A DNA stretch of 64,000 nucleotides, taken from assembly GCA_002269645.1 (NCBI GenBank), contig NIVC01001509.1, positions 62,001 through 126,000 of the forward strand. The letters run 5' to 3'. The first letter of the stretch is position 1, and every line of letters begins with the position of its first letter. The notes beneath the pieces were generated by a model. That model made no database searches. It was not told the origin of the DNA and worked only from the letters and a program-made list of their open reading frames with translations. Below are positions 98 to 64,000 of the stretch, one piece after another. The position numbers and the translations under genes are program-made. The stretch is from Macrostomum lignano (taxonomy: Eukaryota).

Positions 98-3000
98 CTG
101 AAAACGGAAGTATTGCTTAACTGTAGGGCCAGTAGAAGCGTGGAAGTAGCTTAGTATATGGCTTTTTCTACTCAAACTGATCCATTTTATTTACTAATTG
201 TCGCTTAGATAATGACTCATTTTATTGGCTAATTGGCCGCTCAAATGTCGCTAAGTTTACGACTCATTTTATTAGCTAACTGTCGCTAAATTGTTGCTAA
301 GTTTATGACTCATTTTATTGGCTAATTGGCCGCTCAAATGTCGCTAAGTTTATGACTCATTTTATTAGCTAACTGTCGCTAAATTGTTGCTAAGTTTATG
401 ACTCATTTTATTGGCTAATTGGCCGCTCAAATGTCGCTAAGTTTATGACTCATTTTATTAGCTAACTGTCGCTAAATTGTTGCTAAGTTTATGACTCATT
501 TTATTGGCTAATTGTCGCTAAATTTTTGCTAAGGTTATGGCTCATTTTATTGGCTAATTGGCCGCTCAAATACCGCTAAGTTTATTACTCATTTTATAGG
601 CTAACTGGCCGCTTAAATGTCGCTAAGATTATGACTCATTTTATTAGCTAACTGTCGCTAAATTTTTGCTAAGTTTATGACTCATTTTATTGGCTAACTG
701 TCGCTAAATTGTTGCTAAGGTTATGACTCATTTTATTGGCTAATCGTCGCTAAATTGTTGCTAAGGTTATGACTCATTTTATTGGCTAATTGTCGCTAAA
801 TTGTTGCTAAGGTTATGACTCATTTTATTGGCTAATTGTCGCTAAATTGTTGCTAAGTTTGACTCATTTTATTGGCCAACTGTCGCTAAATTGTTGCTAA
901 GTTTGACTTATTTTATTGGCTAACTGTCGCTAAATTGTTGCTAAGGTTATGACTCATTTTATTGGCTAATCGTCGCTAAATTGTTGCTAAGGTTATGACT
1001 CATTTTATTGGCTAATTGTCGCTAAATTGTTGCTAAGTTTGACTCATTTTATTGGCCAACTGTCGCTAAATTGTTGCTAAGTTTGACTCATTTTATTGGC
1101 TAATTGGCCGCTCAAATGTCGCTAAGTTTATGATTCATTTTATTGGCTAACTGTCGCTAAATTGTTGCTAAGTTTATGACTCATTTTATTGGCTAATTGT
1201 CGCTAAATTGTTGCTAAGTTTGACTCATTTTATTGGCTAACTGTCGCTAAATTGTTGCTAAGTTTGACTCATTTTATTGGCTAACTGTCGCTAAATTGTT
1301 GCTAAGGTTATGACTCATTTTATTGGCTAATTGTCGCTAAATTGTTTCTAAGGTTATGGCTCAAATGTCGCTAAGGTTATGACTCATTTTATCGGCTAAT
1401 TGTCGCCAAGATTATGACCCATGTGATTTGCTGATTGGTCATTAAACTTAAGACGCAGTTTCAGCTATCAAAAACGGCTAAGATTATAACCAATTCTTGC
1501 AGATTTTTGAGACATTGGATCAGGAAAATCGTTTCACCTTGACACTCAGCATCGGCAGGTGATAGCTCAGGTCCTGCGGCAGCAGATTCACCAGGCACAC
1601 TGGCGGCTCAATAAACACCGAATGACCCGGCAGGGCCACAGACTGGCCGACAATATCCGCCGGGAAATTCTCGCGCAGCACGCTGGTCACCAGGTGATAG
1701 TCGGGCCCGGTTGGTCCGGCGTTCGAATCCAAAATGTCGTCGTCGGCGCCGCGGTAACGGCAGGCGCAGAGGGCGTCGCGCCGTTCCATCGGCTTGACGG
1801 CCCGGCGCCAGTCGACAGATTCACGCGCAAAGTCGACCGACCAGCGCTCGCTGACGGCCGGCCGGACGCGGAAGGCGCAATCGGCGATGTAGCGAATCGG
1901 CACCGGCAGGCAGTCGCCGGGCTCCAAGTGGAAGCTGCGAGCGCCACTCGGTTCGAAATGCTCGTGCGAACGCAGCTGCAGCTCAACCCGATGGTGCAAC
2001 CGGTTGGTGAAAGTCAGAGCCGAGCGCAGAGTGATGATCTTCTGCGCGGTGCTGTTGCGGACGATGTTGAACACCAGCCGGCCGGCCGGACCAGCTGAGA
2101 AGGCGGCAGCTGCGGCACCGGGCGGAGCAGCGGTGTCACGGAAGAACGTGCCGACCCTATCGATGCAGATTGGCTCGCAGGGCTCCCAGCCTTCCAGCTG
2201 CACGGCCAGCCGGTGTACCCGATAGTCGTGGGTGCTCTCGTGCCGGCGCTTGCCGTCGACGGCGTCCAGCTCGATGGCGGTTTCGGCATCGGCGGCAAGC
2301 CGGCGCCAGTCCGGGTCGCAGTGCAGCTGAGTCTGTTCGCGGACCTCCTGGCCGGCGACCTGGGAGGAGCCGGCGGACGCGGCGGCGGACACAACAGCGA
2401 TGGCGGCGGCGGCCGCGGTGTCGTCTCTGAAGGAGTAGCGAGTCTGCACTTTGTAGTGCACGTCGCAGCCGGTGCGGTTCACCAGGCGGAACGGCACAAA
2501 CGGGCTGCGGCGCCGGCCGCTGCCTACCGCAGTCGAGACTCGCCTAGCCGACAGGGCTGTGGAACGTTGCTCCGCTACCGTAGTAGCTGTGGTTGCTATG
2601 GTAACCGCGCTGGATTCTTTTCTAGTCTGATAGATCCGTTTCTGAGCAGATTCGTATAGATCCAGCATGTGCTTGGTGAGGTTGGCGTTCAGCAGCGAGT
2701 TGGCTGCAGACGAAGGGGGGTCCAAGTTCAACAGTGCCGTCACCATGGCAACCAATATGTAGTTTCTATGACAATGAAAGCCTCGAATACTTACAGGAAA
2801 TTTTGAAGGCAAAAGTCATCTCCGAGCTGTCATCAGAGGTGTCAAGCAGCTTGTTGATCCAATTGAACTGGAAGCTGAAAGTTACAAATCAAAATGGCTT
2901 TGAGCACGGATTAGCGCACAGAGAGCCGAGAGAACATTATATAGTTTATTATAACTGTATCATTATATAGTTTACCTCCAGGGCTCAATAAACGGCTCCC

Positions 3001-9000: not shown

Positions 9001-12000
9001 GTGAGGCCGGGGTCCGGCAGGCCGTATTTGAACAGCCGGAGGTCAAGCAGGTTGCCTAGCCGGGGGGACACGAATTTCTGTCTGTACAGCTGGCCAGTGG
9101 GGCTGAGGTCCAGCAGGATGAAGTTGCCCAGCTGTCCGGCCAAATCCAGATTGCCGTCTCGTAGGCGAAGCCGGCCGTGCAATTCGGACATTGTTGCCCG
9201 GCACAGGCTGTGGTTGCGGTCGTTCAGCACCAGGGAGAACTGAGCCACAGATACTGCGATCTACGGGTGGAGTGATTCAGGGTTTTTGGGAGATTCTTCA
9301 GGGTTTGTGGGGCGATTCTTCAGGGTTTGTGGGGAGATTCTTCAGGGTTTGTGGGGAGATTCTTCAGGGTTTGTGGGGCGTTTTTTCAGGGTTTGTGGGG
9401 AGATTCTTCAGGGTTTGTGGGGCGATTCTTCAGGGTTTGTGGGGCGATTCTTCAGGGTTTTTAGGGAGATTCTTCAGGGTTTGTGGGGAGATTCTTCAGG
9501 GTTTGTGGGGCGTTTTTTCAGGGTTTGTGGGGCGATTCTTCAGGGTTTGTGGGGAGATTCTTCAGGGTTTGTGGGGAGATTCTTCAGGGTTTGTGGGGCG
9601 ATTCTTCAGGGTTTGTGGGGAGATTCTTCAGGGTTTGTGGGGCGATTCTTCAGGGTTTTTAGGGAGATTCTTCAGGGTTTGTGGGGAGATTCTTCAGGGT
9701 TTGTGGGGCGTTTTTTCAGGGTTTGTGGGGCGATTCTTCAGGGTTTGTGGGGAGATTCTTCAGGGTTTGTGGGGCGATTTTTCAGGGTTTGTGGGGAGAT
9801 CTTCAGGGTTTGTGGGGCGATTTTTCAGGGTTTGTGGGGAGATCTTCAGGGTTTGTGGGGCGATTTTTCAGGGTTTGTGGGGAGATTCTTCAGGGTTTGT
9901 GGGGAGATTTTTCAGGGTTTGTGGGGCGATTCTTCAGGGTTTGTGGGGCGATTTTTCAGGGTTTGTGGGGAGATCTTCAGGGTTTGTGGGGCGTTTTTTC
10001 AGGGTTTGTGGGGAGATTCTTCAGGGTTTGTGGGGAGATTCTTCAGGGTTTGTGGGGAGATTCTTCAGGGTTTGTGGGGAGATTCTTCAGGGTTTGTGGG
10101 GCGATTCTTCAGGGTTTGTGGGGAGATTCTTCAGGTTTTGTGGGGCGATTCTTCAGGGTTTGTGGGGAGATTCTTCAGGGTTTGTGGGGAGATTCTTCAT
10201 CTTTTGGGGTGATTTGTGGGGCGAGTCTGAAGGATTGTTTGGGGGCAATTCTTGACGGTTTTTGAGGCCACTTTAAAGGTTCCTGACGGAAATTTTTTAG
10301 GGTTTGTGGGCGGCGATTCTTTAGGATTTTATAACGCAATACATAAAGGCCTAGACCGGATCCCGCAGACCCTGTCTTATGACCTAAGTAGACTAATAGA
10401 GCTCACCTGTTGGTTACAGATCTCCTCCTCAGCGTACTGGCTCTCCTGCAGTATGGTTGTCACCTTAGTAGTGTCGGACATTCGCATCAGCACGTCGCGT
10501 TCGTGAAATTTCGAGCCCAAGTTAAGAAAGTCCAGCAGCAGCACCCAGGCCTGCAGATTCAGGTTGCACACCAGGCTGTTGAACTCCGCCCGGACAAACC
10601 GGCCGGTCTCCGCGTAGCGTGCCGCAAACTGTGGCGCTTTCCGGTCCACCAGGCGTAGCCGGATTCGAACCAGGCTCTGCTGCCGGGCGGCCGCCTCCTC
10701 CTCCCGCTGCTCCGTCCGCCTGTCCGCCTCGTCCGCTGCCCACATGGCCCGCCAGACTTCGTCATCTACCGCGTCGTCGGCTTCCTTGTTGGGCGCGGCA
10801 AAATCTGGCTGATGATCAGTTTGCAGCGTAGCCGGCGGCAGCGTCGACCTCGCCGACAGCGGCGACGGCGGCGGAGTTGCCGGCTTTGGTTTCGATGCCT
10901 GATGGCGCCGATGCTGGCGCCGAGCGGCGGCGGCCTGAGCGCGGGCGCGCGCCGCCACAACCAACATGGAGGCCGGGGTGGCGGCCGTGCGCGGTGGGAA
11001 ACTGGCCGACTCGACGTCGACGCCACCTCCACCGCCGCCGCCCGGAGTTGCTGCCCGACGCTCGTCGCTGCTCCACCCGGCGCCGGCGGGTCGACAGTTG
11101 CCAAAGTCCTCGTCGTCGGACGCGGCGGCCGGCGAGCTCGGACAGGACACGGAGCGGCCGTAGGACGGCGGCGGCCGAGCAGAGTGCTCCGGAGCCAAGG
11201 AGCTCAGCAGATGACGAGTTGGGGAGTCTGGCGACTGCAGCAGGTCCAGCATGGTTAGAGTGCCCAGGCGAAGGCTGACGTCCTTCACCCAGGGGCTGGG
11301 CTTGGCCATGTGGACGGCCAGCTCGCCCGCAGTCAGTCTGGCGATGCCTTTCTCGTCGCCTTCGCTCAAATCGCCGACAATTTCAACGCGCAGCTCCGGC
11401 AAAGCGAAGTCGAACACCAGCGGGGTGTACTCGGATTGAGCTGATGCAGCGGCGTCCGGCAGCTGAGCCTCAGACGCAGCTGTCTCAGTCGCCGAGGAAG
11501 TCGTCTCAGAGGTGCTCCACTCGTCGTACACTAAATTATCCAACGACTTCAGCACCTGATCGAACACCGCCTTGGGCAGGCGAACGGACACGGTTTCCAT
11601 GGTGACGGCTTCAACGCAGAGCAGGTGATTACCGAGACTGGCCGGCTCGACTCCGTCAGCGGAGCCCAGCGTCTCAGCCAGGAGTTTGCGGCAGCAGTTT
11701 CGGCGGCTGAGGCGCAGCGATAGAGAGGCTTCGCTCAGCAGGAACTCGCACGTGTCCGGCCGCTTCAGGCGAGCCAGCAGGCCGCCACGATGCTCGGCTT
11801 CGTCACCCAAATTGGCCCCGGCGATGGCCAGGTCCACAGACATGACGCTGATGTCCTTGAAGTCCAGGTAGAGGGTGCCGACACCCGGGGAGGCGAATAG
11901 CGGCGCCAAGCGACGCTGGTGCTGGCGCCGATCGCGCAACACACGCTCGAATCCGTCAACGTCGAACAGGGAGGCCTGGCAATGCGGGCAGTTCCGATTG

Positions 12001-15000
12001 GCTGGATTCGAACAGACAGGCACAAAGACTACAGGTCACAGACAGGGAGACCGTAGAAAATTATCAGATAAAAAGATCATAGACACAAAGATCATAGACA
12101 CAATGATCAAAGACAACGATCATAGACACAAAGACTGATCATAGACACAAAGACCATAGATAAAAAGACTATAGACACAAAGACTGACCATCGACACAAA
12201 GACTGACCATAGACACAAAGACTGACCATAGACACAAAGACTGACCATAGACACAAAGATTGACCATAGACACAAAGACCATAGATAAAAAGACTATAGA
12301 CACAAAGACTGACCATAGATAAAAAGACTATAGACACAAAGACTGATCATAGACACAAAGACCATAGATAAAAAGACTATAGACACAAAGACTGACCATA
12401 GATAAAAAGACTATAGACACAAAGACTGATCATAGACACAAAGACCATAGATAAAAAGACTATAGACACAAAGACTGACCATCGACACAAAGACTGACCA
12501 TAGACACAAAGACTGACCATAGACACAAAGACTGACCATAGACACAAAGATTGACCATAGACACAAAGACCATAGATAAAAAGACTATAGACACAAAGAC
12601 TGACCATAGATAAAAAGACTATAGACACAAAGACTGATCATAGACACAAAGACCATAGATAAAAAGACTATAGACACAAAGACTGACCATAGATAAAAAG
12701 ACTATAGACACAAAGACTGATCATAGACACAAAGACCATAGATAAAAAGACTATAGACACAAAGACTGACCATAGACACAAAGACTGACCATAGACACAA
12801 AGACTGACCATAGACACAAAGACTGACCATAGACACAAAGACTGACCATAGACACAAAGACTGACCATAGACACAAAGACTGACCATAGACACAAAGACT
12901 GACCATAGACACAAAGACTGACCATAGACACAAAGACTGACCATAGACACAAAGACTGACCATAGACACAAAGATTGACCATAGACACAAAGACTGACCA
13001 TAGACACAAAGACTGACAAATGCAGACAATTAGACAGCCAGATTCAGCTAGACAGACAATTGCAGACACAAGAAAACGCAAATAAAGTTTACCTGATTAG
13101 TAAGCGAAATTGTGCCCAGATGGGCAACCAGTGCCTCATTGCTAGTGGGAGTTTTGGGCCACACAATAACGGGAGTGTCAAGTCGCACAGTCAGTCGAAT
13201 GCCATCCAAGCCACTGTCGGCGGCCGAGGCTGCCGAGGCGGCGTCGGACGCGTCAGCGGCTGTTGCCATAGTTACAGAATCGTCCAAGTCAAACGAACGC
13301 TGCTGTTGATGAATGACAGACTGAGCCACGGCAGTGGCGGCCGCGCGAACTTTAAGCGCCAATCGACTTTTGTACTCGGCAAATTTCGAAACGCATTCGC
13401 CAACTTCGTACAGCAGCCGGGGCGCGTGCAGATAGCACAGCGAGGCCATCTGGGCTTCAATTTCTCGGTCGCCCTCGGCGTCGGAGTACACAGATAGAGT
13501 GAGGGCCTGGGCGGGGAATTCAGATGCACAAGTGGCGGCATTTAGTGAAGCTTTACGAGAAAATATAATATCAGAATCAGGTCAGCAGCGATTCTTACGA
13601 GAAAGTCGAATAATGTCAGGGGCGGTTTATTGGAGGTCAGTCGGGAATGATTTATCGGGGACAGTCAGGGCGATTATCGGGGGGCAGTCAGGGGAGATTT
13701 ATCGGGGGGCAGTCAGGGGAGATTTATCGGGGGTAGTCAGGGGAGATTTATCGGGGGCAGTCAGGGGAGATTTATCGGGGGGCAGTCAGGGGAGATTTAT
13801 CGGGGGGCAGTCAGGGGAGATTTATCGGGGGGCAGTCAGGGGAGATTTATCGGGGGGCAGTCAGGGGAGATTTATCGGGGGGGGCAGTCAGGGGAGATTT
13901 ATCGGGGGACAGTCAGGGGAGATTATCGCGACAAAGTCAGTTCATCAGCCAGTGGCACCTGCTCGCGCTGAGGGCAGCGCTCGTCAGTTGATTCCGAAGG
14001 ATCTCCACCGATCCACACGATGGACCTGTGCAGCCGGGACGAATTAGTCAAGTCCAGGACGCTGACGCTGGCCAGAGAAGCCGTGGCAAAGCTGCTGGAG
14101 TCCACGTGATTCGCTGTCACCTGCGAGTTTGCGGTTCGGTTTGGGGCGGCATTGTCTGTGATAACCCTGACAGGTCCAATGCGATCCAGTCTTGAAATTT
14201 ACTGCATATTGAATGGATTCCAATGTTCTTTACCACTGATAGGCTGTTGATTATTCTGACGAACTGCAGCTTTCCCCACACACCTAGTCACCAGACACCT
14301 CTGCACATGAGACACCTCTATCCACTAGACACTCCTAGACAGCAGACACCCCAACTCACTAGATCTCATGCCCCTATCCGCCAGATACCCCTAGACAGCA
14401 GACACCCTAGACAGCAGACACCCCTAGACAGCAGACACCCCTAGACAGCAGACACTCCTAGACAGCAGACACCCCTAGACAGCAGCACTATCACCTACTC
14501 ACTCTTACCTACGTCAATGTTCTACTCAAAACCCAAGCCAGAGACTCACCTGCATCCCAGTCAGAGTGACAGTGGCGACCTTCTTAGCCGACTTTCTCTG
14601 CTGCTGCGGGTCGTCTAGCACGCGAACTAGCAGCACGTGTAATCGTGAAAAAGTCGCCTGCAGTTCGCTGCGAACTCCGGGCGCTTTAACTGCAGCTGAG
14701 GCAGCTGGCGGCTCTGAATCCTGACGGCCCCGGTTCTGCTGCTGCTTCTTTTTCTGTTGTTGCTCTTGGCTAGAAGCGGCAGCTTCAGCCGCGCGTCGCT
14801 CACCCTCCTTGGCGGCGTAAGTGTCTGCTGGGTTTATGCGCTTAGCAAAGCTTACTAGCTCTACCAGCGTCTTCTGATTGGCTGAAATGGTTAGGGTTAT
14901 AATAAGTCAACACTCCACTCAGCTAGCTGCTCCACCCCACTCCGCCAACCATTCACTCCACCAACCCCCTTACTCCGCCAACAACCCCACTCCGCCAACC

Positions 15001-25748: not shown

Positions 25749-26111
25749 GAGAAAGAGAGAGAGTGAGAGAGAAGAAAGAAGAGAAGAAAGGGGGAAGGGA
25801 GAAGGGAGAGAGGAGCGGAAAGAGGAAAGGGGAGAGAATAAAGATGAGAGAAAGAACTGAATTCAGACATAAACCTTCAAAAGGCTATATTGCTATGAAG
25901 TTTCAAAGACCTAAGGGCCATATAGAAAGGCTTTGTAGGCTGCATGTGGCCTATAGCTAAGAGTTTACCAACCCTTAATTTTATTGCAATAATAGACTTT
26001 AAAACAACAATTACCTTGAAAAACACCAAATGACACTTTTTCACTATTGAAGTTTTCCACATATTTTCCCACATATTTTTGAAGGATATAACTTATTACT
26101 CCTTCAAGCAT
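1..26111 (-). CDS. VPS13D: Vacuolar protein sorting 13D-like lipid transfer protein; multi-exon, 5' part only (continues past position 1)
   Basis: Spliced N-terminal chorein domain: MLEGVISYILQKYVGKYVENFNSEKVSFGVFQ (26111-26015), GDVTLENLPLKSDALLDIFDLPVEIVS (25466-25386), GHIGKISLKIPYTQLRSQPWLFTIEKLYIV (25284-25172), with GT-AG junctions in matching phase. Also VVENIQLIVRDVHIRYED, WWRFA and YFNRDLSGWEPFIEPW motifs. An internal UBA domain points to the D paralogue. Confidence 0.93.
128..1400. repeat. Intronic minisatellite, ~44-46 bp unit (gactcattttattggctaattgtcgctaaattgttgctaaggttat)
   Basis: Period 46 between 725 and 771; AT-rich; about 20 TGACTCA cores. Confidence 0.95.
1538..2703 (-). 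CDS. VPS13D: VPS13D large exon, start of the VAB (SHR-BD) repeat region
   Basis: SPFVPFRLVNRTG, LAVQLEGWEPCEPICIDRVGTFFR, KIITLRSALTFTNRL, IEPPVCLVNLLP; polypyrimidine acceptor ccccccttcgtctgcag|; donor |gtgaaa. Confidence 0.85.
2976..3093 (-). CDS. VPS13D: VPS13D exon with the conserved WEPFIEPW motif (not in ORF track)
   Basis: LEFRWSLEGPREGRCSATLMVNYFNRDLSGWEPFIEPW; ctgcag| acceptor, |gtaaac donor. Confidence 0.85.
3300..3757. repeat. Intronic minisatellite, ~19 bp unit (gacaggtgagactctgatt)
   Basis: Direct tandem periodicity. Confidence 0.9.
3779..4135 (-). CDS. VPS13D: VPS13D exon encoding the UBA domain
   Basis: QLGFDPADCRYALGEAGGDLQLAALLL is a UBA-type GF...AL...GDL..A..LL pattern; bounded by ctccag| and |gtaaag. 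Confidence 0.85.
4170..4370. repeat. Intronic minisatellite, 16 bp unit (cacaagctcgaatctt)
   Basis: Direct tandem periodicity. Confidence 0.9.
4960..5510. repeat. Intronic degenerate minisatellite built on a ggtgaatc core
   Basis: Recurrent ggtgaatc/gttagtgaatcgttggattaggtgaa units. Confidence 0.85.
5946..7351. repeat. Intronic minisatellite, 16 bp unit (gaagcttggggattgt)
   Basis: Occupies almost all of intron 7359-5894; one HindIII site per unit. Confidence 0.97.
8240..8540. repeat. Intronic minisatellite, 28 bp unit (gctgggccagcctcccagatcctcagtt)
   Basis: Direct tandem periodicity. Confidence 0.93.
9275..10330. repeat. Intronic minisatellite, 22 bp unit (ttcttcagggtttgtggggaga)
   Basis: Direct tandem periodicity. 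Confidence 0.96.
12065..13015. repeat. Intronic minisatellite, 19 bp unit (agacacaaagactgaccat) with block duplications
   Basis: Direct tandem periodicity; ORFs 12107-12337 and 12377-12628 start with an identical translation. Confidence 0.96.
13655..13925. repeat. Intronic minisatellite, 23-24 bp unit (cagtcaggggagatttatcgggg)
   Basis: Direct tandem periodicity. Confidence 0.93.
14320..14485. repeat. Intronic minisatellite, 17 bp unit (ctagacagcagacaccc)
   Basis: Direct tandem periodicity. Confidence 0.85.
14925..15070. repeat. Intronic degenerate C-rich repeat (ccaaccaccccactccg)
   Basis: Short, degenerate tandem units. Confidence 0.75.
15755..16698. repeat. Intronic minisatellite, 14 bp unit (ctaagcgggagga[g/t]; central variant ctaagcgggagagt)
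   Basis: Direct tandem periodicity; begins ~10 nt inside the donor at 16708. Confidence 0.96.
17345..18197. repeat. Intronic minisatellite, 15 bp unit (cacagtgtcatgtat)
   Basis: Direct tandem periodicity. Confidence 0.97.
18775..19375. repeat. Intronic minisatellite, 22 bp unit (gtgactaattggcgattctcag)
   Basis: Direct tandem periodicity. Confidence 0.93.
19640..20995. repeat. Intronic minisatellite, 21 bp monomer with a 42 bp dimeric higher-order repeat
   Basis: ctcagtggacactgctatcct alternates with ctcagtgaacaccgcttcccc on the left; monomeric ctcagtggacaccgctaccc[c/a] on the right. Confidence 0.96.
22360..22992. repeat. Intronic minisatellite, 34 bp unit (gggaacggagtctgtaggtgtgggatctagcgat)
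   Basis: Fills intron 23005-22354 almost end to end. Confidence 0.96.
23545..24475. repeat. Two abutting intronic minisatellites: 23 bp (catcaattctcagcctcaatctc, ~23545-24178) and 25 bp (cacaacacaatccctgccaagcgga, ~24178-24475)
   Basis: Direct tandem periodicity with an abrupt switch of unit. Confidence 0.94.
25676..25860. repeat. (GA)n microsatellite and purine-rich tract in VPS13D intron 1
   Basis: Direct observation. Confidence 0.9.
26015..26111 (-). CDS. VPS13D: VPS13D first coding exon (not in ORF track)
   Basis: ATG CTT GAA GGA...TTT CAA G|gtaatt; 32 codons plus 1 nt; phase fits the next exon ttttag|GC GAT GTA at 25466. Confidence 0.93.
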
Positions 26112-28436: not shown

Positions 28437-28697
28437 TGTAATCCCGTTAGACCGTCCCTAAACGATCGCACATACCATGCATATGCCATGTGAGAAATGA
28501 CAATAAACAACTAAATTATTATTTATTTAAATGATGTAATAGTAATGATAACAAATCACTAATGTTACACGCGTTTATTTAACATTTATTCATACATGTA
28601 AAATGTGAAAAACACGTTTCTGAATGCAGAATACGATTAAACGCAAGTCATGCAAAGATTTTAGAATGGACACGCATTTAGACAATGTAGAAACTTT
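28437..28697 (+). repeat. Left arm of a ~261 bp inverted repeat (partner 32370-32631)
   Basis: tgtaatcccgttagaccgtccc...gacaatgtagaaacttt is the reverse complement of 32370-32631, with about 9 differences, all in the AT-rich middle part. Confidence 0.96.
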
Positions 28698-28699
28698 CT

Positions 28700-28925
28700 G
28701 ACAGTCACTATCTGACTGTCACTATCTGACTGCCATTACCTGACTGTCATTATCTGACTGCCACTATCTGACTGTCACTATCTGACTGTCACTATCTGAC
28801 TGCCACTATCTGACTGTCACTATCTGACTGTCACTATCTGACTCTCACTTTCTGACTGTCATATCTGACTGTCACTATCTGACAGTCACTATCTGACTGT
28901 CACTATCTGACTGTCATTATCTGAC
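28700..28925. repeat. 14 bp minisatellite (tgtcactatctgac); resumes at ~29360-29402 after an interruption
   Basis: Direct tandem periodicity. Confidence 0.9.
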
Positions 28926-29586
28926 CCCCCCAGTTCGCTACATCAGGTAACCAGTGTTGAGCACCAGTCCGTTAATAAGCGTTAAGATTTTTCATTAACG
29001 TTAAAGGACTGTCGTTAAGATTTTTTGCAGTAACGGATTAACGAATTTGCGTTAATAATTTTGTGAGTTACCGACAAATTCATCGTTAACGTTAATGACA
29101 ATGTCAATGACGAAAGACGCAAAGAAAGAACAAAAATATGTCTGACGGGAAGTTACAACAGTGAGAATGTATTCGAATTTACCTAAATGCCTAATTAATC
29201 TCTTTATTTATCAAGATGATCATGCAAATGCAACAACTCCGTATTTTCTGTGTTAACTTTACCGGATTAACGCTTATTATCGATTATCAGTTAACTTTTA
29301 GTTAACTTAACGAAATTAACACATAAGTTAAGATTTCTTCGTTTTAACGCTAACGCTTTTGCCATTATCTGACTGTCATAATATGACTGTCATTATCTGA
29401 TTGTCGATTCAACGCAGAGAGAACTATCAATTAAGGATTGGTAGATTCATCATCCCGATGAGGCGAGGAGGCTATTGGCTCTTGGTCGATACAAAATGGG
29501 CCATATTACTTCCGTTACCGTATTGCCTACTGACACAAATGTGGCGGTAGCGAAGTATAAATTGAAGTTGAGTGCTCTCGGTAATT

Positions 29587-29706
29587 GGCAACGGCCATAC
29601 CACGTTGAAAACACCGGTTCTCGTCTGATCACCGAAGTTAAGCAACGTTGGGTTTGGTTAGTACTTGGATGGGTGACCGCCTGGGAATACCAAATGCTGT
29701 TGTCTT
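29587..29706 (+). rRNA. 5S rRNA gene, single copy
   Basis: GGCAACGGCCATACCACGTTGAAAACACCGGTTCTCGTCTGATCACCGAAGTTAAGCAACG...GGATGGGTGACCGCCTGGGAATACCAAATGCTGTTGTCTT. Terminal helix pairs; TTTGG/CCAAA stem is complementary; T-run terminator at 29705-29710; TATAAA at 29556-29561 (about -30). Confidence 0.96.
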
Positions 29707-30101
29707 TTTTGCCATTTCGTTTTGTGCACTTAAGCACTTAACTAAAAAATTATATTAAAATGACTAACTGTTTGTATTTTCTTTTTGTTTCACTATAGAA
29801 GATTGAGTCGGCTTTAAAACATAGCACTTTTCTAACTTTTATTTTGTGCTTGCAATGCTTGTTCTTGCAATTATTTTCTATACATATCGCCGATTTCCAG
29901 AATCAGTTAATCTGAATAACAAAATTAATTATTTGCTACCAAAACGATCGTTAATATTCGTTAACCCCATTTTCCACAGGATTTCTTGATTCATTCAACA
30001 TTGTAAATATGTTTGTAAGAATATTAGACTACAGGTTTGTTACTTTCTACTTAAAGTAGGCGAAATAGACGCAGACGGTAAAATTTGTCAAGCAATTCTT
30101 T

Positions 30102-30121
30102 TTTCGAGAAATTTCCAGAAC
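30102..30121 (+). promoter_or_regulatory. Distal heat shock element, 4 perfect units
   Basis: tTTCgaGAAatTTCcaGAAc, an alternating nTTCn/nGAAn HSF site. Confidence 0.9.
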
Positions 30122-30163
30122 GAGCTAAAAATAGCTCGCGGCGCATTCGCGGAGGATGGTGCG

Positions 30164-30178
30164 GGAAACTTCTAGAAA
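30164..30178 (+). promoter_or_regulatory. Proximal heat shock element, 3 perfect units
   Basis: gGAAacTTCtaGAAa, ~12 bp upstream of the TATA box. Confidence 0.9.
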
Positions 30179-30190
30179 CGGGCCGGAGTC

Positions 30191-30198
30191 TATAAAAG
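30191..30198 (+). promoter_or_regulatory. Hsp70 TATA box
   Basis: TATAAAAG between the HSEs and the ATG at 30355. Confidence 0.85.
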
Positions 30199-30354
30199 AG
30201 AAGCACCCGGCCCAGAATTGGAGGCAAGAATTGAAATCGGATCGCAAGGCGAACGAAACGAACAGCAAAGCCAAGCAAGCCATCAAGGCAACTGACGCAT
30301 CAGCCTACGCTACTACTCGTATATCAAGCAAGTGCGAATTAATCGATCGACAAC

Positions 30355-32271
30355 ATGGGTAAGAGCAACAACGGACCTGCAATCGGCATTGACCTGGGCA
30401 CCACGTACTCGTGCGTTGGCGTGTTCCAGGCAGGCAAAGTGGAGATCATTGCCAATGACCAGGGCAACCGAACCACTCCCAGCTACGTGGCCTTCACGGA
30501 CACGGAGAGGCTGGTAGGCGACGCTGCAAAGAACCAGGTGGCGATGAATCCGGACAACACGGTGTTTGACGCGAAGCGTCTGATCGGACGAAAGTTCGGA
30601 GACGAGACGGTGCAGAGGGACATGAAGCTGTGGCCATTCAAGGTGACGAACGACGGAGGCCGACCCAAGATTGAGGTGCAGTACATGGGCGAGAGGCGCA
30701 GCTTCTACCCGGAGGAGATCTCCGCCATGGTTCTCACCAAGATGAAGGAGACGGCGGAGGCCTACCTCGGCGAGAAGGTGTCTGACGCGGTGATCACAGT
30801 GCCGGCCTACTTCAACGACAGTCAGCGACAGGCAACGAAGGATGCCGGGGCGATTGCCGGACTGAACGTGCTGCGCATCGTGAACGAGCCGACTGCTGCG
30901 GCACTGGCCTACGGTCTGGACAAGAACCTGCAGGGTGAGAAGAACATTCTCATCTTTGACCTGGGAGGCGGCACGTTCGACGTGTCCATCCTGACAGTGT
31001 CGGAGGGCAGCATGTTCGAGGTGCGCGCAACCGCCGGCGACACCCACCTCGGCGGCGAGGACTTTGATCATCGTCTGGTTGAGCACCTGATGCAAGAGTT
31101 CAAGCGCAAGTACCGCAAGGACATGAGCGGCAACGCTCGGGCTGTGAGACGCCTTCGGACTGCGGCTGAGCGAGCGAAGCGAACGCTGAGCAGCTCGGCA
31201 CAGGCGAGCATCGAGATTGACTCGCTGTTCGAGGGCATCGACTTTTACACGAGCGTCACCAGGGCTCGATTCGAGGAGCTGTGCGCCGACCTGTTTCGCC
31301 AGACGATGGAGCCGGTGGAGCGAGCGCTGAGAGACGCCAAGATGGACAAGAGCAACATCAACGAGATCGTGCTGGTTGGCGGATCAACCCGGATCCCGAG
31401 GGTGCAGAAGTTGCTGCAAGAATTCATGGGCGGTCGGACGCTGAACAAGTCGATCAACCCGGACGAGGCGGTCGCCTACGGAGCTGCCGTGCAGGCTGCG
31501 GTGCTGACTGGCGTGAAGGACGACAAGATCGACGACCTGCTGCTGCTGGATGTGGCGCCGCTGTCTCTCGGCATCGAGACCGCCGGCGGGGTGATGACCA
31601 AGATTGTCGAGCGGAACAGCCGCATCCCGACCAAGGCGACGCAGACGTTCACCACCTACTCGGACAACCAGAGCGGCGTCACGGTGCAGGTGTTCGAGGG
31701 CGAGCGAGCGCTCACCAGAGACAACCACCTGCTGGGCCGGTTCAACCTGGACGGCATCCCGCCAGCGCCGCGCGGAGTCCCTCAGATCGAGGTGACCTTC
31801 GACGTTGACGCCAACGGAATCCTGGTGGTGTCGGCGAAAGACAAGAGCACCAGCAAGGAGGAGAAGATCACGATCACGAACGACAAGGGCCGCCTCTCGA
31901 AGGACGAGATCGACAGGATGGTGCGGGATGCGGAGAAGTTCCGCGAGGAGGACGAGCGGCACCGCGAGCGCCTGGCGGCCCGCAACCAACTCGAGTCGCT
32001 CGCCTTCCAGTACAAGCAGGCTGCCAACGACTGCAAGGACAAGCTGGGCGAGAAGGACTCCGCCGAGGTGGTGGCCGCCTGCGAGCAAGTGATTTCCTGG
32101 CTGGAAAACAACCAGACTGCCGAGAAGGACGAGATCGCCCACCAGCAGCAGCAACTCAGCAGCCGCTGCTCGCCAATCATGGCCAAGCTTCATCAGCAGC
32201 AGCAGCAGTCTGGTCAGCCTCAGCCTGGACATCAGCGAGCTGGAGGACCCACCGTTGAGGAGGTCGACTGA
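30355..32271 (+). CDS. hsp70: Heat-inducible cytosolic Hsp70, intronless, 638 aa
   Basis: [25 protein letters not shown] and [11 protein letters not shown] signatures; C-terminal GPTVEEVD; HSE and TATA promoter. Confidence 0.99.
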
Positions 32272-32369
32272 GCATCATGTGCACATTCTTCAAGGACTGA
32301 GTCTCTTGAATAACCTTTGTACAAAGTATACATTTGCAATTTCATGTATCATCGATCGAGCTAGTTGTA

Positions 32370-32631
32370 AAAGTTTCTACATTGTCTAAATGCGTGTCCA
32401 TTCTAAAATCTTTGCATGACTTGCGTTTAATCGTATTCTGCATTCAGAAACGTGTTTTTCACATTTTACATGTATGAATAAATGTTAAATAAACGCGTTT
32501 AACATTAGTGATTTTTTATCATTTACTATTACATTATTCAACCAAATATTAATTTAGTTGTTTATTGTCATTACTCACATGGCATATGCATGGTATGTGC
32601 GATCGTTTAGGGACGGTCTAACGGGATTACA
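32370..32631 (-). repeat. Right arm of the inverted repeat; lies between the convergent Hsp70 and CENP-V-like stop codons
   Basis: Reverse complement of 28437-28697; contains AATAAA on both strands. Confidence 0.96.
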
Positions 32632-32716: not shown

Positions 32717-33202
32717 CTACTTGGACCGATTGGACAGGTTCTCTCCGATTGTCTCCATCGACTGTTCCCAGTTCTGGCCGTCGAAGTGCTCCCAGACTAA
32801 CTGGCTGACGGTGTCCGGCCGCAGGCAGTGCACATTGATGCCGTAGCCGTCCGGATTGGATCTGGGCGTGTAGAAACTCTGCACTCCGCACCTGGCGCAG
32901 AACGTGTGCTTGGCTGCGTGCGTGTTGAAGGTGTAAGTTGTTAAACAGTCGGAGCCCGTCAGCAGGGTGAAGTGGCTGGCTGGCACAATGAAATGATCAT
33001 TGCCTTTCATGCTGCATACTGAGCAGGAGCATTTGATGACATTGATCACTGCCGGTGCCCTTACTGTGAAGGTCACGGCACCGCAGTGGCAGCCGCCGTG
33101 ATGAGTCACCAGCTCGGTCTTGTCCTTGTTGACGGGATGAGGCGGTTGGGAACAGCGGAATTTATAGCTGCTGTACACTACTTTAATGAGGTTGTCATGC
33201 AC
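32717..33202 (-). CDS. CENPV: CENP-V-like / GFA (glutathione-dependent formaldehyde-activating) family protein
   Basis: HHGGCHCGAVTF, KCSCSVCSMKGNDHFIVP, HTFCARCGVQSFYTPRSNPDGYGINVHCL. The exact start codon is uncertain. Confidence 0.9.
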   Translation of the reverse strand: MHDNLIKVVYSSYKFRCSQPPHPVNKDKTELVTHHGGCHCGAVTFTVRAPAVINVIKCSCSVCSMKGNDHFIVPASHFTLLTGSDCLTTYTFNTHAAKHTFCARCGVQSFYTPRSNPDGYGINVHCLRPDTVSQLVWEHFDGQNWEQSMETIGENLSNRSK

Positions 33203-33217
33203 TGTAGTATTAATGCA

Positions 33218-33522
33218 GTGGACAGCTACCCTACCTTCTAGTCGATTCGGTGGACAGCTACCCTACCTTCTAGTCGATTCGGTGGACAGCTACCCTACCT
33301 TCTAGTCGATTCGGTGGACAGCTACCCTACCTTCTAGTCGATTCGGTGGACAGCTACCCTACCTTCTAGTCGATTCGGTGGACAGCTACCCTACCTTCTA
33401 GTCGATTCGGTGGAAAGCTACCCTACCTTCTAGTCAATGCGGTGGACAGCTACCCTACCTTCTAGTCAATGCTGTGGACAGCTACCCTACCTTCTAGTCA
33501 ATGCTGTGGACAGCTACCCTCC
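33218..33522. repeat. 32 bp minisatellite (gtggacagctaccctaccttctagtcgattcg) directly upstream of the CENP-V-like ATG
   Basis: Period 32 (33221 to 33253), about 9 copies. Confidence 0.93.
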
Positions 33523-54662: not shown

Positions 54663-56191
54663 TCAGTCGCAGCCAGACTGCAGAGCCTCCTGCTCCTCTG
54701 CCAGCCGCTTGTGCTGCAGCAGAATCATCTTCAACTCGTCGCGGGCAATCCGGCCGTCCTTGTCGGAGTCCCACTGCTCCATGATGACATCGCGGAAGTA
54801 TAGCATCTTGGACTCGTCGTAGTCCTCGCCGGTCAGCTCCAGGAGGTCCTTCAACAGTCCGGCCAGCTCGTCTCCCTCGATCTGGCCGCTCCTGTCCGTG
54901 TCGTATTTGCGGAACAGCCGGTCGATCTCGGGGCCGGACAGGCGGGACGCGTTTTTCAGCAGCGGCTTGGCCAAGAAATTGTCCTTCACTGGCAGCAGGC
55001 GGGCCAGCTCGCTCAGCTGCAGCTGGCCGTCACCGTTTCTTAGAAATAATGGAATGGCGGGAATTCAAATTGTTTCAGTTTCTTCAGCTGAAGTAGTTGC
55101 TTCTCTCGGAATATATAGAAGTTCAATACTTGTGAGACTAATTAAATGCTAAACTGTAAACTTTGAAACTAGAGAATAAGCTTACTCAGAATCTATTGAA
55201 AACTCTGAGAATTTCAAATCCTCAAGATCCACAAAGTTTTAATCGGTAGAGGATCTCAAAAAAACTTAATTCTCAGAATCCGATTTCACAATTTTTTTAA
55301 AAATTGAAATTCTTGATTCTTGGAATCATAAATTATAATTTTAAAAATACAAAGTGCATACTTCTTTAAATCCGAAATTATAAATCTGTAGAATTCCAAA
55401 TATAAGACGCTTTGTATCCTCAATTCTTAAAATCTTAAATTCCACATTGTTAGAATCCTTGATTCTTAAAATCTTAAATTCCACATTGTTAGAATCCTTG
55501 ATTCTTAAAATCTTAAATTCCACATTGTTAGAATCCTTGATTCTTAAAATCTTAAATTCCACATTGTTAGAATCCTTGATTCTTAGAATCGCAAATTCCA
55601 ATTTGTTAGAATCCTTGATTCTAAGAATCACAAATTCCAAATCGTTAGAATTCCAGGCCCCTCGCACCTGTCAAACAGGCGCAGGATGGTGTCCCGGTAC
55701 TCCTTCATGCGCTCCTCGCCGACCTTGCGCTTCTCTCCCAGGATGTGCCGCAGAAAGTCGCCCAACTCGTCGGCATCGATGTGGCCGGAGCTGTCACGGT
55801 CGAACTGTCGCCAGACCCGGATGAACTCCACGCTGCTGGACAGCGGGTTGCTCCGCCGGAACAGCAGCAGGAAATTCTCCTCCGTCGGCAGCATCTGCGC
55901 CAGCTCGCCAATCTCGATTTTATTGTCCTCGTTCTCGTCGTACGCCCGCATGAACTCCTCCTTGAGGTCCTGCAGGGCGCTGTCCGACACGACCTCTTCG
56001 CCAATCCGGCCGGGAACGATGGAGCTGACGAACTCGCGCAGGAAGCTGTCCAGCTCCCGGTCCTCGATGTAGCCGCTACCATCCAGATCGTAGTGGCTCC
56101 ACACCTCCAGGAACTGGCTGGCCGTGAAGTTCTTGAAGGCGCGGGTGTCCTTGTCGCGAAATTTCTGCAGGAAGTTGCTGGCGGTGGCCAT
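54663..56191 (-). CDS. Six-EF-hand calcium-binding protein (calretinin/calbindin-32/secretagogin family), 2 exons (56191-55668, 55038-54663)
   Basis: EF loops DLDGSGYIEDRE, DENEDNKIEIGE, DRDSSGHIDADE, D|RNGDGQLQLSE (across a phase-2 junction), DTDRSGQIEGDE, DSDKDGRIARDE; linker LPTEENFLLLFR. Confidence 0.93.
55430..55650. repeat. 39 bp minisatellite in the calbindin-like intron
   Basis: tccacattgttagaatccttgattcttaaaatcttaaat, about 5 copies. Confidence 0.88.
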
Positions 56192-56825
56192 GGCGCAGGT
56201 TCGGCAAACACGTTCGGCAGATATAAGCTATGCAAATTTTAACTGCGAGCAGCGACCTTTGCACCGTCCAACGTTTTGGTTTCCGCTTTAATAACAGCCC
56301 GACCCACCCTTGGCTGAACAGAGGAATCCGGAGGGTCTAGCGATCAGCCTTCTTGTCCGATTGGGATATGATTTTTATCGATTTTTCTCACCCATAGCTC
56401 AGAATTTCTCTGCCCCCCCAGCCAGCCGGGTGCAGCTCCCAACCGAAAAAAATCCCCGTCGATTCGCACACGCAGTGGAAATTCACAAAAAAACGGTCCC
56501 CAGCCTACTTGTAGCAGCAGCTGCACAGAAGAATCTATAGAGTCGCTGGCAGGTGCAGGGGGGGGGGTTCAGTCACGTGATGCGATAAGATCGTCTATTG
56601 TTATTTGGCTATGCCGCTCGCAGCTCATTGGTCCCGCAGAATTTCCACGAAATCAGCTGCATGGAGACTCGCAAGCCGGCGAGAGAGATTAGGGCAGGAA
56701 TTTTATTGCCTCCTTTTTTGTGCAAAGCACCGAGACCGATTTTGATTTATATCAAACTTTTTTTCAACCTGTATAGCAGGGTATAAATATAACATTGAAA
56801 CACGGTCCAAAATGACACTGCTTCA

Positions 56826-63619: not shown

Positions 63620-64000
63620 GTGAGTCTGACTGGCATTATCTATTATCTATCCTTTCGGTCATAGATAAGATATAAGATAAGATATATAGATAAGATAGAT
63701 AAGATAGGACGAAAAATGACACACACAGTGCGAAAAAAATTCACCCTTTCTTTAAAATTTAAATTCGAATAAATATACCATTATTTTGACCGAAACTAGG
63801 TCTTCGCCAGGGTATAATTGAGAAAAAAAGCTGTAATAAGGGGCGGCGCATTAAAAAAAATTGGTAGTATTTGTCGTGAGTATAGAAGTACAAAATGGCC
63901 GTGCGAATTTCGTGAACAACTCGCCCAGAGTGCTCCGTGAAACGAAACACTATTGTGATACAGACGCTTTTTTCAGTGATAACATGTGTTTAAACCTCCC

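What the first reader, a model, noticed from the sequence alone, without database searches (positions are those of the whole stretch)
28437..32631. 5S rRNA + inducible Hsp70 block bracketed by ~261 bp inverted repeats
Seen: 28437-28697 and 32370-32631 are reverse complements with about 9 differences; the outer 58 bp and inner ~125 bp are identical. They enclose a minisatellite, a complete 5S gene, an HSE/TATA promoter and an intronless Hsp70. No transposase or TSD is visible. Inference, four competing models: (a) a non-autonomous cargo element carrying a stress gene plus a Pol III gene; (b) an invertible cassette flipped by recombination between the arms; (c) the remnant of a divergent Hsp70 pair, as at Drosophila 87A, whose left gene was lost or collapsed in assembly; (d) two chance insertions of one dispersed repeat.
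Basis: partly seen in the sequence, partly recalled or inferred. Interest (0 to 1): 0.8.

Follow-up and report, generated by a model that had tools for sequence, protein, structure and literature searches.

The report
Flatworm Hsp70 gene with inverted terminator copies
In the flatworm Macrostomum lignano, a heat-inducible Hsp70 gene with a lone 5S rRNA gene upstream is bracketed by two inverted copies of its own 3'-end region, most likely the leftover of a head-to-head Hsp70 gene pair that lost one member; it is an ordinary product of gene-family turnover, not a mobile or invertible cassette.

Summary
Arms 28437-28697 and 32370-32631 are reverse complements (262 aligned columns, 8 substitutions and 1 indel) and occur only twice in the 64 kb window. 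They enclose a 14-bp minisatellite, one full-length 5S rRNA gene, a canonical HSE/TATA promoter and an intronless 638-aa Hsp70 gene. The window comes from Macrostomum lignano.

The right arm is not a foreign repeat. It starts 99 nt after the Hsp70 stop codon and carries that gene's two AATAAA signals. On the other strand it carries the first AATAAA downstream of the convergent GFA-domain gene. All nine differences fall between these opposed poly(A) signals. The left arm is the same terminator piece, oriented as the 3' end of a divergently transcribed partner gene.

Such a partner exists in this species. UniProt model A0A1I8I9J3 reads an antisense Hsp70 copy joined to the promoter and coding sequence of a second copy identical to the window's gene, which is a head-to-head pair. 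No trace of a left coding sequence, target-site duplication or transposase remains in the window.

Copy number and read-level checks need the genome, which the tools did not hold. Interest is low to moderate.

The parts
28437..28697 (-). Left arm: inverted copy of the Hsp70/GFA 3'-end region. On the minus strand it reads like the distal 3'UTR of an Hsp70 gene that would lie to its right. Minus-strand AATAAA at 28574-28579 and 28585-28590; plus-strand AATAAA at 28502-28507.
28693..28925 (.). 14-bp minisatellite (ACTATCTGACTGTC, about 17 copies) that begins exactly at the inner end of the left arm. It resumes in phase at 29360-29405.
28926..29359 (.). 434-bp insertion that splits the minisatellite. 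It is rich in CGTTAA hexamers arranged in inverted symmetry. Nature unknown (possibly MITE-like).
29556..29562 (+). TATAAAT about 25-31 nt upstream of the 5S gene. This is a TATA-like upstream element of the sort used by many invertebrate 5S genes (inference from position only).
29587..29710 (+). Complete single 5S rRNA gene (29587-29705) followed by a T6 Pol III terminator (29705-29710). It matches the published M. lignano 5S primers exactly.
30103..30198 (+). Heat-shock promoter: HSE1 TTCgaGAAatTTCcaGAA (30103-30120), HSE2 GAAacTTCtaGAA (30165-30177), TATAAAAG (30191-30198). Three of the four canonical HSE matches in the whole 64 kb are here.
30355..32271 (+). Intronless Hsp70 coding sequence, 638 aa, ending in EEVD. 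GC3 is 0.83.
32272..32369 (+). Proximal 99 nt of the Hsp70 3'UTR; unique, not part of the repeat.
32370..32631 (+). Right arm, consisting of: the distal Hsp70 3'UTR with AATAAA at 32477 and 32488; about 70 nt between the poly(A) signals, holding all 9 arm differences; and the stretch carrying the minus-strand AATAAA (32561-32566) that would serve the convergent GFA gene.
32717..33262 (-). Terminal exon of a GFA-domain (CENP-V-like) gene converging on the right arm. Its stop codon lies 86 nt outside the arm.
26013..26111 (-). First coding exon of a VPS13 gene transcribed leftwards (ATG at 26111). It is the left neighbour of the block, 2.3 kb from the left arm.

Best explanation
The block is a native Macrostomum lignano heat-shock locus lying between a VPS13 gene and a GFA-domain gene.

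The 262-bp repeat is the 3'-end region where Hsp70 (+) and the GFA gene (-) converge. It holds the distal Hsp70 3'UTR with its poly(A) signals, a short stretch between the poly(A) signals, and the GFA gene's poly(A) signal.

An inverted duplication once created a head-to-head Hsp70 pair whose two 3' ends pointed outward, each carrying this terminator piece. In this copy of the locus the left gene (proximal 3'UTR, coding sequence and promoter, about 2.3-2.5 kb) was later deleted. That left only its terminal 261 bp as the left arm.

The spacer that remains holds a minisatellite (itself split by a 434-bp insertion) and a solitary but apparently intact 5S rRNA gene.

Shown: the anatomy of the arms, the intact inducible-type Hsp70 gene, the intact 5S gene, and the existence of a head-to-head Hsp70 pair in M. 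lignano gene models.

Inferred: that this locus once held the second gene, and that deletion rather than a short copying event produced the left arm.

The arms have no demonstrated function beyond acting as terminators. Recombination between them could occasionally invert the segment, with no effect on expression.
For: (1) Species. A VPS13 exon is 99% identical to M. lignano A0A1I8J3G7. The Hsp70 is 99-100% identical to M. lignano UniRef entries. The published M. lignano 5S primers match exactly.

(2) The right arm is contiguous with its neighbours on both sides. It starts 99 nt after the Hsp70 stop and holds the only AATAAA signals downstream of Hsp70 (32477, 32488). It also holds the first minus-strand AATAAA after the GFA stop (32561).

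(3) All 9 differences lie between these opposed signals (P about 2e-4 for such clustering). The arm therefore has the internal structure of two gene ends, not of a transposon.

(4) The left arm's orientation is that of the 3' end of a minus-strand gene lying to its right, that is, divergent from the extant gene.

(5) UniProt model A0A1I8I9J3 (1070 aa; UniRef100 n=3):
- Residues 1-459 are the antisense reading of an Hsp70 coding sequence from its 3' end back to codon 153. This copy differs from the window gene by five point differences and a 6-nt in-frame deletion.
- This part is joined by a predicted GT..AG intron to the sense promoter, 5'UTR and coding sequence, which are 100% identical to the window.
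- The only arrangement that gives this is a head-to-head pair.

(6) At least three further M. lignano Hsp70 models with different 5'UTR readings show a multi-copy family. This fits the recent whole-genome duplication and assembly redundancy reported for this species (PMC5704211, PMC5730564).

(7) No TSD and no transposase were found, and the arm has only two copies in 64 kb.

(8) Inverted Hsp70 pairs that undergo deletions and pseudogenisation are well known in Diptera (PMC3071340).
Against: No remnant of a left coding sequence, 99-nt proximal UTR or inverted promoter survives. tblastn and sensitive blastn both find nothing, so the deletion is inferred, not seen.

The genomic DNA of the A0A1I8I9J3 locus could not be retrieved. 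It is therefore unknown whether that pair is allelic or homeologous to this locus, whether its spacer holds the 5S gene, or whether its left copy is followed by the arm.

The ML2 assembly behind that model is an early long-read assembly, and a palindromic artefact cannot be fully excluded. The substitutions and the in-frame deletion in the left copy argue against one.

The genome-wide copy number of the arm is unknown.
Confidence: 0.55

Rival explanations
1. Short templated inverted duplication. A double-strand break about 3.7 kb upstream of the Hsp70 terminator was repaired by copying 261 bp from the nearby terminator in inverted orientation (fold-back or template-switch filler DNA). No second gene was ever present here.
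For: Both ends of the left arm are sharp, and there is no trace of coding sequence, proximal UTR or promoter beside it. There is a possible 3-nt microhomology (CCA) at the outer junction.
Against: This model needs an independent event, whereas the species demonstrably has full inverted Hsp70 copies. The arm's divergence (about 3%, clustered) shows it is not very recent. The microhomology is trivial.
Confidence: 0.2
2. The arm is one member of a dispersed repeat family (for example a MITE or SINE fragment). Two copies happened to insert on either side of Hsp70, and the right copy was co-opted as the gene's poly(A) region.
For: More than half of the M. lignano genome is repetitive (PMC5730564). 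The genome could not be searched. The arms are AT-rich (31% GC).
Against: There are only two copies in 64 kb and no TSD. The arm supplies the poly(A) signals of both convergent genes, and the differences sit exactly between them. The pattern found no hit in public metagenome contigs.
Confidence: 0.1
3. Assembly artefact. The true locus holds a full head-to-head pair, and the left gene was dropped or mis-joined in this assembly.
For: M. lignano assemblies are redundant and repeat-rich. The gene model with a pair has a right copy identical to the window gene.
Against: The sequence between the arms is unique and continuous. There is no shared sequence at 28697/28698 that could cause a mis-join. 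The arms differ at 9 positions, so they are not a collapsed or mirrored read.
Confidence: 0.05
4. Non-autonomous cargo transposon carrying Hsp70 plus 5S, mobilised through its 261-bp terminal inverted repeats.
For: Inverted repeats bracket a discrete gene-bearing block.
Against: There is no TSD at any register and no transposase in the block. The termini are unlike those of known superfamilies. The right terminus is contiguous with the neighbouring GFA gene's 3' end, so the right arm is native to its site.
Confidence: 0.03
5. A functional invertible cassette flipped by recombination between the arms to regulate Hsp70 or 5S.
For: A 129-bp perfectly identical tract in inverted orientation could support occasional homologous recombination.
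Against: Promoter, gene and poly(A) signals all lie within or on the arms, so expression would be the same in both orientations. No recombinase gene or recombinase site is present.
Confidence: 0.03

Closest known systems
Head-to-head (inverted) Hsp70 pair of Diptera, e.g. Drosophila melanogaster Hsp70Aa/Hsp70Ab at 87A and the inverted pairs of Stratiomyidae (PMC3071340)
   Same: Intronless HSE/TATA-driven Hsp70 gene. Inverted homology with 3' ends pointing outward. A spacer of 1-5 kb. A family kept near-identical within the species. Deletions in intergenic regions and loss of copies are documented.
   Different: Only one coding sequence survives here. The homology is confined to 262 bp of 3' flank starting 99 nt after the stop. 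The host is a flatworm. The spacer carries a Pol III 5S gene and a minisatellite.
M. lignano UniProt gene model A0A1I8I9J3 ('Secreted protein', actually an antisense-Hsp70/sense-Hsp70 fusion model)
   Same: Its sense half is 100% identical to the window's promoter-proximal region and coding sequence.
   Different: It includes a second, inverted Hsp70 coding sequence, with five point differences and a 6-nt deletion, which the window lacks.
5S rRNA orphons / solitary 5S genes outside the main array
   Same: A single full-length 5S gene with terminator, outside any tandem array. The M. lignano 5S array (unit about 1.65 kb) maps to the end of chromosome MLI2p, and its authors allowed for undetected dispersed copies (PMC5704211).
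   Different: It lies 400 bp upstream of, and in the same orientation as, a heat-shock promoter. The literature search found no description of such a linkage.
Inverted duplications left at inversion breakpoints by staggered breaks (Drosophila; from my own knowledge, not checked in the literature here)
   Same: Short inverted repeats flanking a few-kb segment.
   Different: That model predicts that the inner side of one copy keeps its ancestral neighbour. Here the right arm keeps both its ancestral neighbours (Hsp70 3'UTR and GFA 3' end) and the left arm keeps neither.

Membership tests
Head-to-head Hsp70 gene pair (87A type) | Two Hsp70 coding sequences in opposite orientation around a shared spacer | tested here: not met
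   tblastn of the Hsp70 protein against the window finds only 30355-32268. The window is therefore filed as a relic, not a member.
Head-to-head Hsp70 gene pair (87A type) | Inverted homology of the gene ends, with 3' ends pointing outward | tested here: met
   The arms carry the Hsp70 poly(A) region in the outward-pointing orientation.
Head-to-head Hsp70 gene pair (87A type) | An intact pair exists in the same species | tested here: met
   A0A1I8I9J3 is an antisense Hsp70 joined to a sense Hsp70. This is indirect, protein-level evidence only.
Class II TIR transposon / MITE with cargo | Target-site duplication flanking the terminal inverted repeats | tested here: not met
   No 2-10 bp direct repeat at shifts of -3 to +3.
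Class II TIR transposon / MITE with cargo | Transposase gene, or many dispersed copies for a non-autonomous element | tested here: inconclusive
   No transposase in the block and only two arm copies in 64 kb. The genome-wide count is not testable with these tools.
Site-specific invertible DNA switch | A recombinase nearby, and a promoter or gene split by the inversion boundary | tested here: not met
   No recombinase ORF; promoter, coding sequence and poly(A) signals are all internal to or on the arms.
Site-specific invertible DNA switch | Both orientations present in a population or in reads | not testable with these tools
   No read data available.
Foldback element | Long inverted arms built of tandem subrepeats | tested here: not met
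   The arms are unique sequence. The 14-bp array abuts only the left arm's inner end.
5S rRNA gene (Rfam RF00001) | Full-length match above the gathering score, with conserved helices | tested here: met
   116.5 bits against a gathering score of 38, model positions 1-120 of 120, no non-canonical pairs flagged.
5S rRNA gene (Rfam RF00001) | Pol III terminator (T-run) directly after the gene | tested here: met
   TTTTTT at 29705-29710.
5S rDNA tandem array | Head-to-tail repeats of gene plus spacer (about 1.65 kb in M. lignano) | tested here: not met
   One 5S gene and no fragment elsewhere in 64 kb. The unit size is from PMC5704211.
Heat-inducible Hsp70 (HSPA1/Hsp70B type) | HSP70 domain, C-terminal EEVD, intronless ORF | tested here: met
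   Pfam 851 bits. Single ORF of 638 aa ending ...TVEEVD. The best named relatives are HSPA1 / Hsp70 B2 / Hsp68 types.
Heat-inducible Hsp70 (HSPA1/Hsp70B type) | Canonical HSEs next to a TATA box | tested here: met
   Three of the four canonical HSE matches in the window lie at 30101-30177, 14-90 nt upstream of TATAAAAG.
Heat-inducible Hsp70 (HSPA1/Hsp70B type) | Transcript induced by heat | not testable with these tools
   No expression data could be mapped. The supplements of PMC12801592 are not held.

The most novel reading that the evidence does not exclude
The block is a self-contained heat-shock domain kept by selection. The two arms would act as bidirectional poly(A)/termination modules that stop heat-induced read-through and upstream antisense transcription from reaching the VPS13 promoter and the GFA gene. 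The TFIIIC/Pol III-bound 5S gene 400 bp upstream would act as a chromatin barrier or nucleosome-free bookmark for the HSE promoter, a flatworm analogue of the scs/scs' boundaries at Drosophila 87A.

The perfect identity of the UTR-like parts of both arms, with all differences confined to the stretch between the poly(A) signals, would then reflect constraint rather than gene conversion.
Probability: 0.06. Interest if true: 0.6.

Novelty: new member of a known kind. Interest (0 to 1): 0.28.

Why it matters
The finding documents, at low cost, that the inverted-pair organisation of inducible Hsp70 genes (best known from flies and mosquitoes) also occurs in a flatworm. It also captures a stage of its decay, with one gene lost and only the terminator stub left.

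It flags mis-predicted M. lignano gene models: an antisense/sense Hsp70 fusion named 'Secreted protein', and spurious introns in Hsp70.

It gives M. lignano researchers a compact, well-delimited native heat-shock promoter and terminator that could serve as an inducible cassette alongside the hsp20 promoter already in use.

It locates a solitary 5S gene outside the MLI2p array, which bears on the reported loss of the 5S cluster from chromosome MLI1.

None of this overturns current understanding.

Tried and rejected
- **Full-length Hsp70 search.** It timed out. The C-terminal 146-aa query returned only proteins of 255 aa or less and no close relative. The tool appears to return only proteins up to about 1.75 times the query length. 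A 368-aa query then found the M. lignano entries.
- **Exact-protein look-up of the window Hsp70.** Not on record, so no M. lignano genomic contig could be fetched.
- **Contigs of the 82%-identical relatives** (L001 from JGI; L002 and L003 from Logan run SRR14039613). Coding sequence is 75-81% identical. L001 has an HSE/TATA promoter but no 5S in its 422 nt upstream. None shows arm homology.
- **Metagenome scan with a 24-mer from the arm.** No hits. The metagenome scan with the Hsp70 C-terminus gave only distant Hsp70s (54% or less, one 47-residue fragment at 68%), which were uninformative.
- **Search for relics.** No Hsp70 fragments elsewhere in the window. No homology between the sequences outside the two arms, nor between the inner-left region and the Hsp70 gene or its UTRs. 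No second GFA copy.
- **Staggered-break inversion footprint.** Rejected, because the right arm keeps both its natural neighbours.
- **Is the 1657 bp between the left arm and the ATG one 5S rDNA unit?** The published PCR product is 1645 bp. Rejected as a whole-unit insertion, because that stretch includes the native HSE/TATA promoter and 5'UTR. A partial unit cannot be tested.
- **Other ncRNAs in 27.5-33.5 kb at E≤1.** None apart from 5S.
- **Literature.** No paper describing M. lignano Hsp70 loci or an Hsp70-5S linkage was found.
Full report
**1. Observation.**

The inverted repeat is real. The repeat finder reports two abutting arm pairs, 28544-28697/32370-32523 (154 nt, 99%) and 28437-28545/32523-32631 (109 nt, 94%). 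blastn merges them into one 262-column alignment at 96.6% identity. It finds no further copy in the 64 kb window apart from a 25-nt AT-rich chance match.

In the MAFFT alignment the homology starts and stops abruptly. The inner 129 columns are identical. The next 75 columns hold 8 substitutions and one 1-nt indel. The outer 58 columns are identical again.

Between the arms lie the following features:
- A 14-bp minisatellite at 28693-28925.
- A full-length 5S rRNA gene at 29587-29705 (+). It scores 116.5 bits in Rfam, covers model positions 1-120 of 120, and has all pairs canonical. A T6 run follows it.
- Two canonical heat-shock elements and a TATA box at 30103-30198.
- An uninterrupted 638-aa Hsp70 ORF at 30355-32271.

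There is no target-site duplication at any register and no transposase-like ORF.

**2. Source organism and surroundings.**

A 431-aa VPS13 exon (1523-2815, minus strand) is 99% identical to Macrostomum lignano A0A1I8J3G7. The Hsp70 is 99-100% identical to four M. lignano UniRef entries. The 5S primers published for M. lignano match at 29612-29632 and 29589-29607 without mismatch. The window is therefore M. lignano, a flatworm with a recent whole-genome duplication and a repeat-rich, redundant assembly (PMC5704211, PMC5730564, PMC12801592).

About 35% of the window is minisatellite. The genes around the block are:
- A VPS13 gene on the minus strand, from at least 1.5 kb up to its ATG at 26111.
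- 2.3 kb of AT-rich spacer.
- The Hsp70 block.
- A GFA-domain (CENP-V-like) gene on the minus strand. The stop of its terminal exon is at 32717-32719, 86 nt outside the right arm.

**3. What the arm is.**

The right arm begins 99 nt after the Hsp70 stop codon. It contains the only two plus-strand AATAAA signals downstream of the gene (32477, 32488). It also contains, on the other strand, the first AATAAA after the GFA stop (32561-32566). The arm is thus the place where two convergent genes end.

All nine differences between the arms fall at 32499-32573, which is between the two opposed poly(A) signals. The chance of nine random differences spanning 75 of 262 positions or fewer is about 2e-4. 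This internal structure belongs to native gene ends, not to a transposon terminus.

The left arm is the same sequence inverted. Read on the minus strand, it is the distal 3'UTR and terminator of a gene that would lie immediately to its right, divergent from the extant Hsp70.

**4. Evidence that such a partner gene exists in this species.**

The 90% cluster of the closest M. lignano Hsp70 holds four UniRef entries. One of them, A0A1I8I9J3 (1070 aa, named 'Secreted protein', UniRef100 n=3), is a composite.

- Residues 1-459 are the antisense-strand translation of an Hsp70 coding sequence, from near its stop codon back to codon 153.
- This part is then joined to the sense reading of the Hsp70 promoter-proximal region, 5'UTR and coding sequence.
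- In window coordinates the join runs from a GT after 30811 (minus strand) to the AG at 30133-30134. It is a predicted intron of unknown length.
- A single strand can only read antisense-Hsp70 and then sense-Hsp70 if two genes lie head to head.

The sense half is 100% identical to the window gene. The antisense half differs by five point differences and a 6-nt in-frame deletion. That pattern looks like a diverged paralogue rather than a mirrored read.

Two other models (A0A1I8HH09, A0A1I8IHW4) differ in their 5'UTR readings, so the family has several near-identical copies.

**5. Best explanation.**

An inverted duplication produced a head-to-head Hsp70 pair, each gene ending in the terminator piece. 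At the locus in this window the left gene was lost by a deletion of about 2.3-2.5 kb. The deletion ended inside the left gene's 3'UTR and left the 261-bp stub.

The deletion itself is inferred. No coding, UTR or promoter remnant is detectable.

The remaining spacer is a mosaic. The 14-bp array starts exactly at the stub's inner end. It is itself split in phase by a 434-bp insertion rich in CGTTAA motifs. This shows that the interval has been reworked repeatedly.

The arrangement parallels the inverted Hsp70 unit of Diptera, where intergenic deletions and loss of copies are documented (PMC3071340). I give this reading about 0.55.

**6. Rivals.**

- **Short templated inverted copy of the terminator made during break repair.** It fits the sharp ends and the lack of remnants, but ignores the documented full inverted copy (0.2).
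- **Dispersed repeat.** It cannot be excluded without the genome, but it fits poorly with the arm's two-gene-end structure, the two copies in 64 kb and the lack of a TSD (0.1).
- **Assembly artefact.** Unlikely, because the interior is unique and the arms differ at nine positions (0.05).
- **Cargo transposon.** It fails the TSD and transposase tests, and its right 'terminus' is native to its site (0.03).
- **Regulatory invertible cassette.** It fails on logic: promoter, gene and terminator all move together, and either arm gives the same 3' end (0.03). Occasional homologous inversion between the arms remains possible but would be neutral.
- **Staggered-break inversion footprint.** Rejected, because the right arm keeps both its ancestral neighbours.

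**7. The 5S gene.**

The gene is complete. It has a TATA-like element at about -30 and a T6 terminator, and it is the only 5S sequence in the window.

The main M. lignano 5S array has a unit of about 1.65 kb and sits at the end of MLI2p. The homeologous cluster on MLI1 was reported lost, with the caveat that a few copies might escape FISH (PMC5704211). This solitary copy fits that caveat.

Whether it is transcribed, and whether its place 400 bp upstream of a heat-shock promoter matters, is unknown. I found no report of an Hsp70-5S linkage. A related macrostomid contig (L001) has the HSE/TATA promoter but no 5S within its 422 nt upstream.

**8. Verdict.**

The feature is a normal by-product of Hsp70 gene-family turnover in a repeat-rich, recently duplicated genome.

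It is a new member of a known kind (the inverted Hsp70 unit and its decay products), now seen in a flatworm, with an unusual but unexplained 5S neighbour. Interest is about 0.28.

The key missing test is a BLAST of the arm and the retrieval of the A0A1I8I9J3 loci in the M. lignano assemblies, neither of which these tools could reach.

Noticed in passing
window 28926-29359 (also 29949-29964): A 434-bp segment interrupts the 14-bp minisatellite exactly in phase, with no TSD. It holds 13 of the window's 30 CGTTAA hexamers, on the plus strand in its left half and the minus strand in its right half. CGTTAATAAGCGTTAA at 28970 has an inverted copy at 29267. A third similar copy (CGTTAATATTCGTTAA) lies between the 5S gene and the Hsp70 promoter. 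It could be a MITE-like insert or a cluster of binding sites.
   Followed up: partly
window 1-26111 and throughout: About 35% of the 64 kb is minisatellite, with dozens of unrelated units of 12-59 bp and arrays up to 2.8 kb. Most sit in the introns of a VPS13 gene (minus strand, ATG at 26111). This is far above the 15% simple/tandem-repeat fraction reported for the whole genome.
   Followed up: partly
window 33218-33520: A 32-bp minisatellite (9.5 copies, 98% identical) runs into the 5' end of the GFA-domain ORF. The first 18 residues of the stop-to-stop ORF are encoded by repeat units in frame. The true start or upstream exon of this gene is therefore unclear.
   Followed up: no
UniProt A0A1I8I9J3, A0A1I8I8J9, A0A1I8HH09, A0A1I8IHW4 (mapped to window 30135-32268): The public M. 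lignano Hsp70 gene models are mis-predicted. All four splice out 30538-30795 as a spurious intron and translate promoter or 5'UTR sequence. One fuses an antisense Hsp70 to a sense Hsp70 and is named 'Secreted protein'.
   Followed up: yes
window 32499-32573 (arm positions 130-204): All 9 differences between the arms are confined to the 75 nt between the opposed poly(A) signals. The UTR-like parts are 129/129 and 58/58 identical. This could reflect gene-conversion tracts, constraint, or a slippage-prone AT-rich stretch.
   Followed up: partly
window 54666-56227 (-) and 63049-63672 (+): Other genes in the window: a calbindin-like gene with multiple EF-hands, and a proteasome Rpt ATPase (OB domain) exon.
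   Followed up: no
L001 (JGI metagenome 3300040801, contig Ga0450804_2748667): An environmental contig encodes an Hsp70 about 82% identical to the query region used (the C-terminal 368 aa of the window protein; 81% at DNA level over the coding sequence). It has its own HSE pair and TATAAAAAG, so it is presumably from a related macrostomid flatworm in a metagenome sample.
   Followed up: partly
window 10498-10512: The only canonical HSE match outside the Hsp70 promoter lies in a long minus-strand ORF (10380-12035) within the VPS13 gene span. It is probably a chance match.
   Followed up: no
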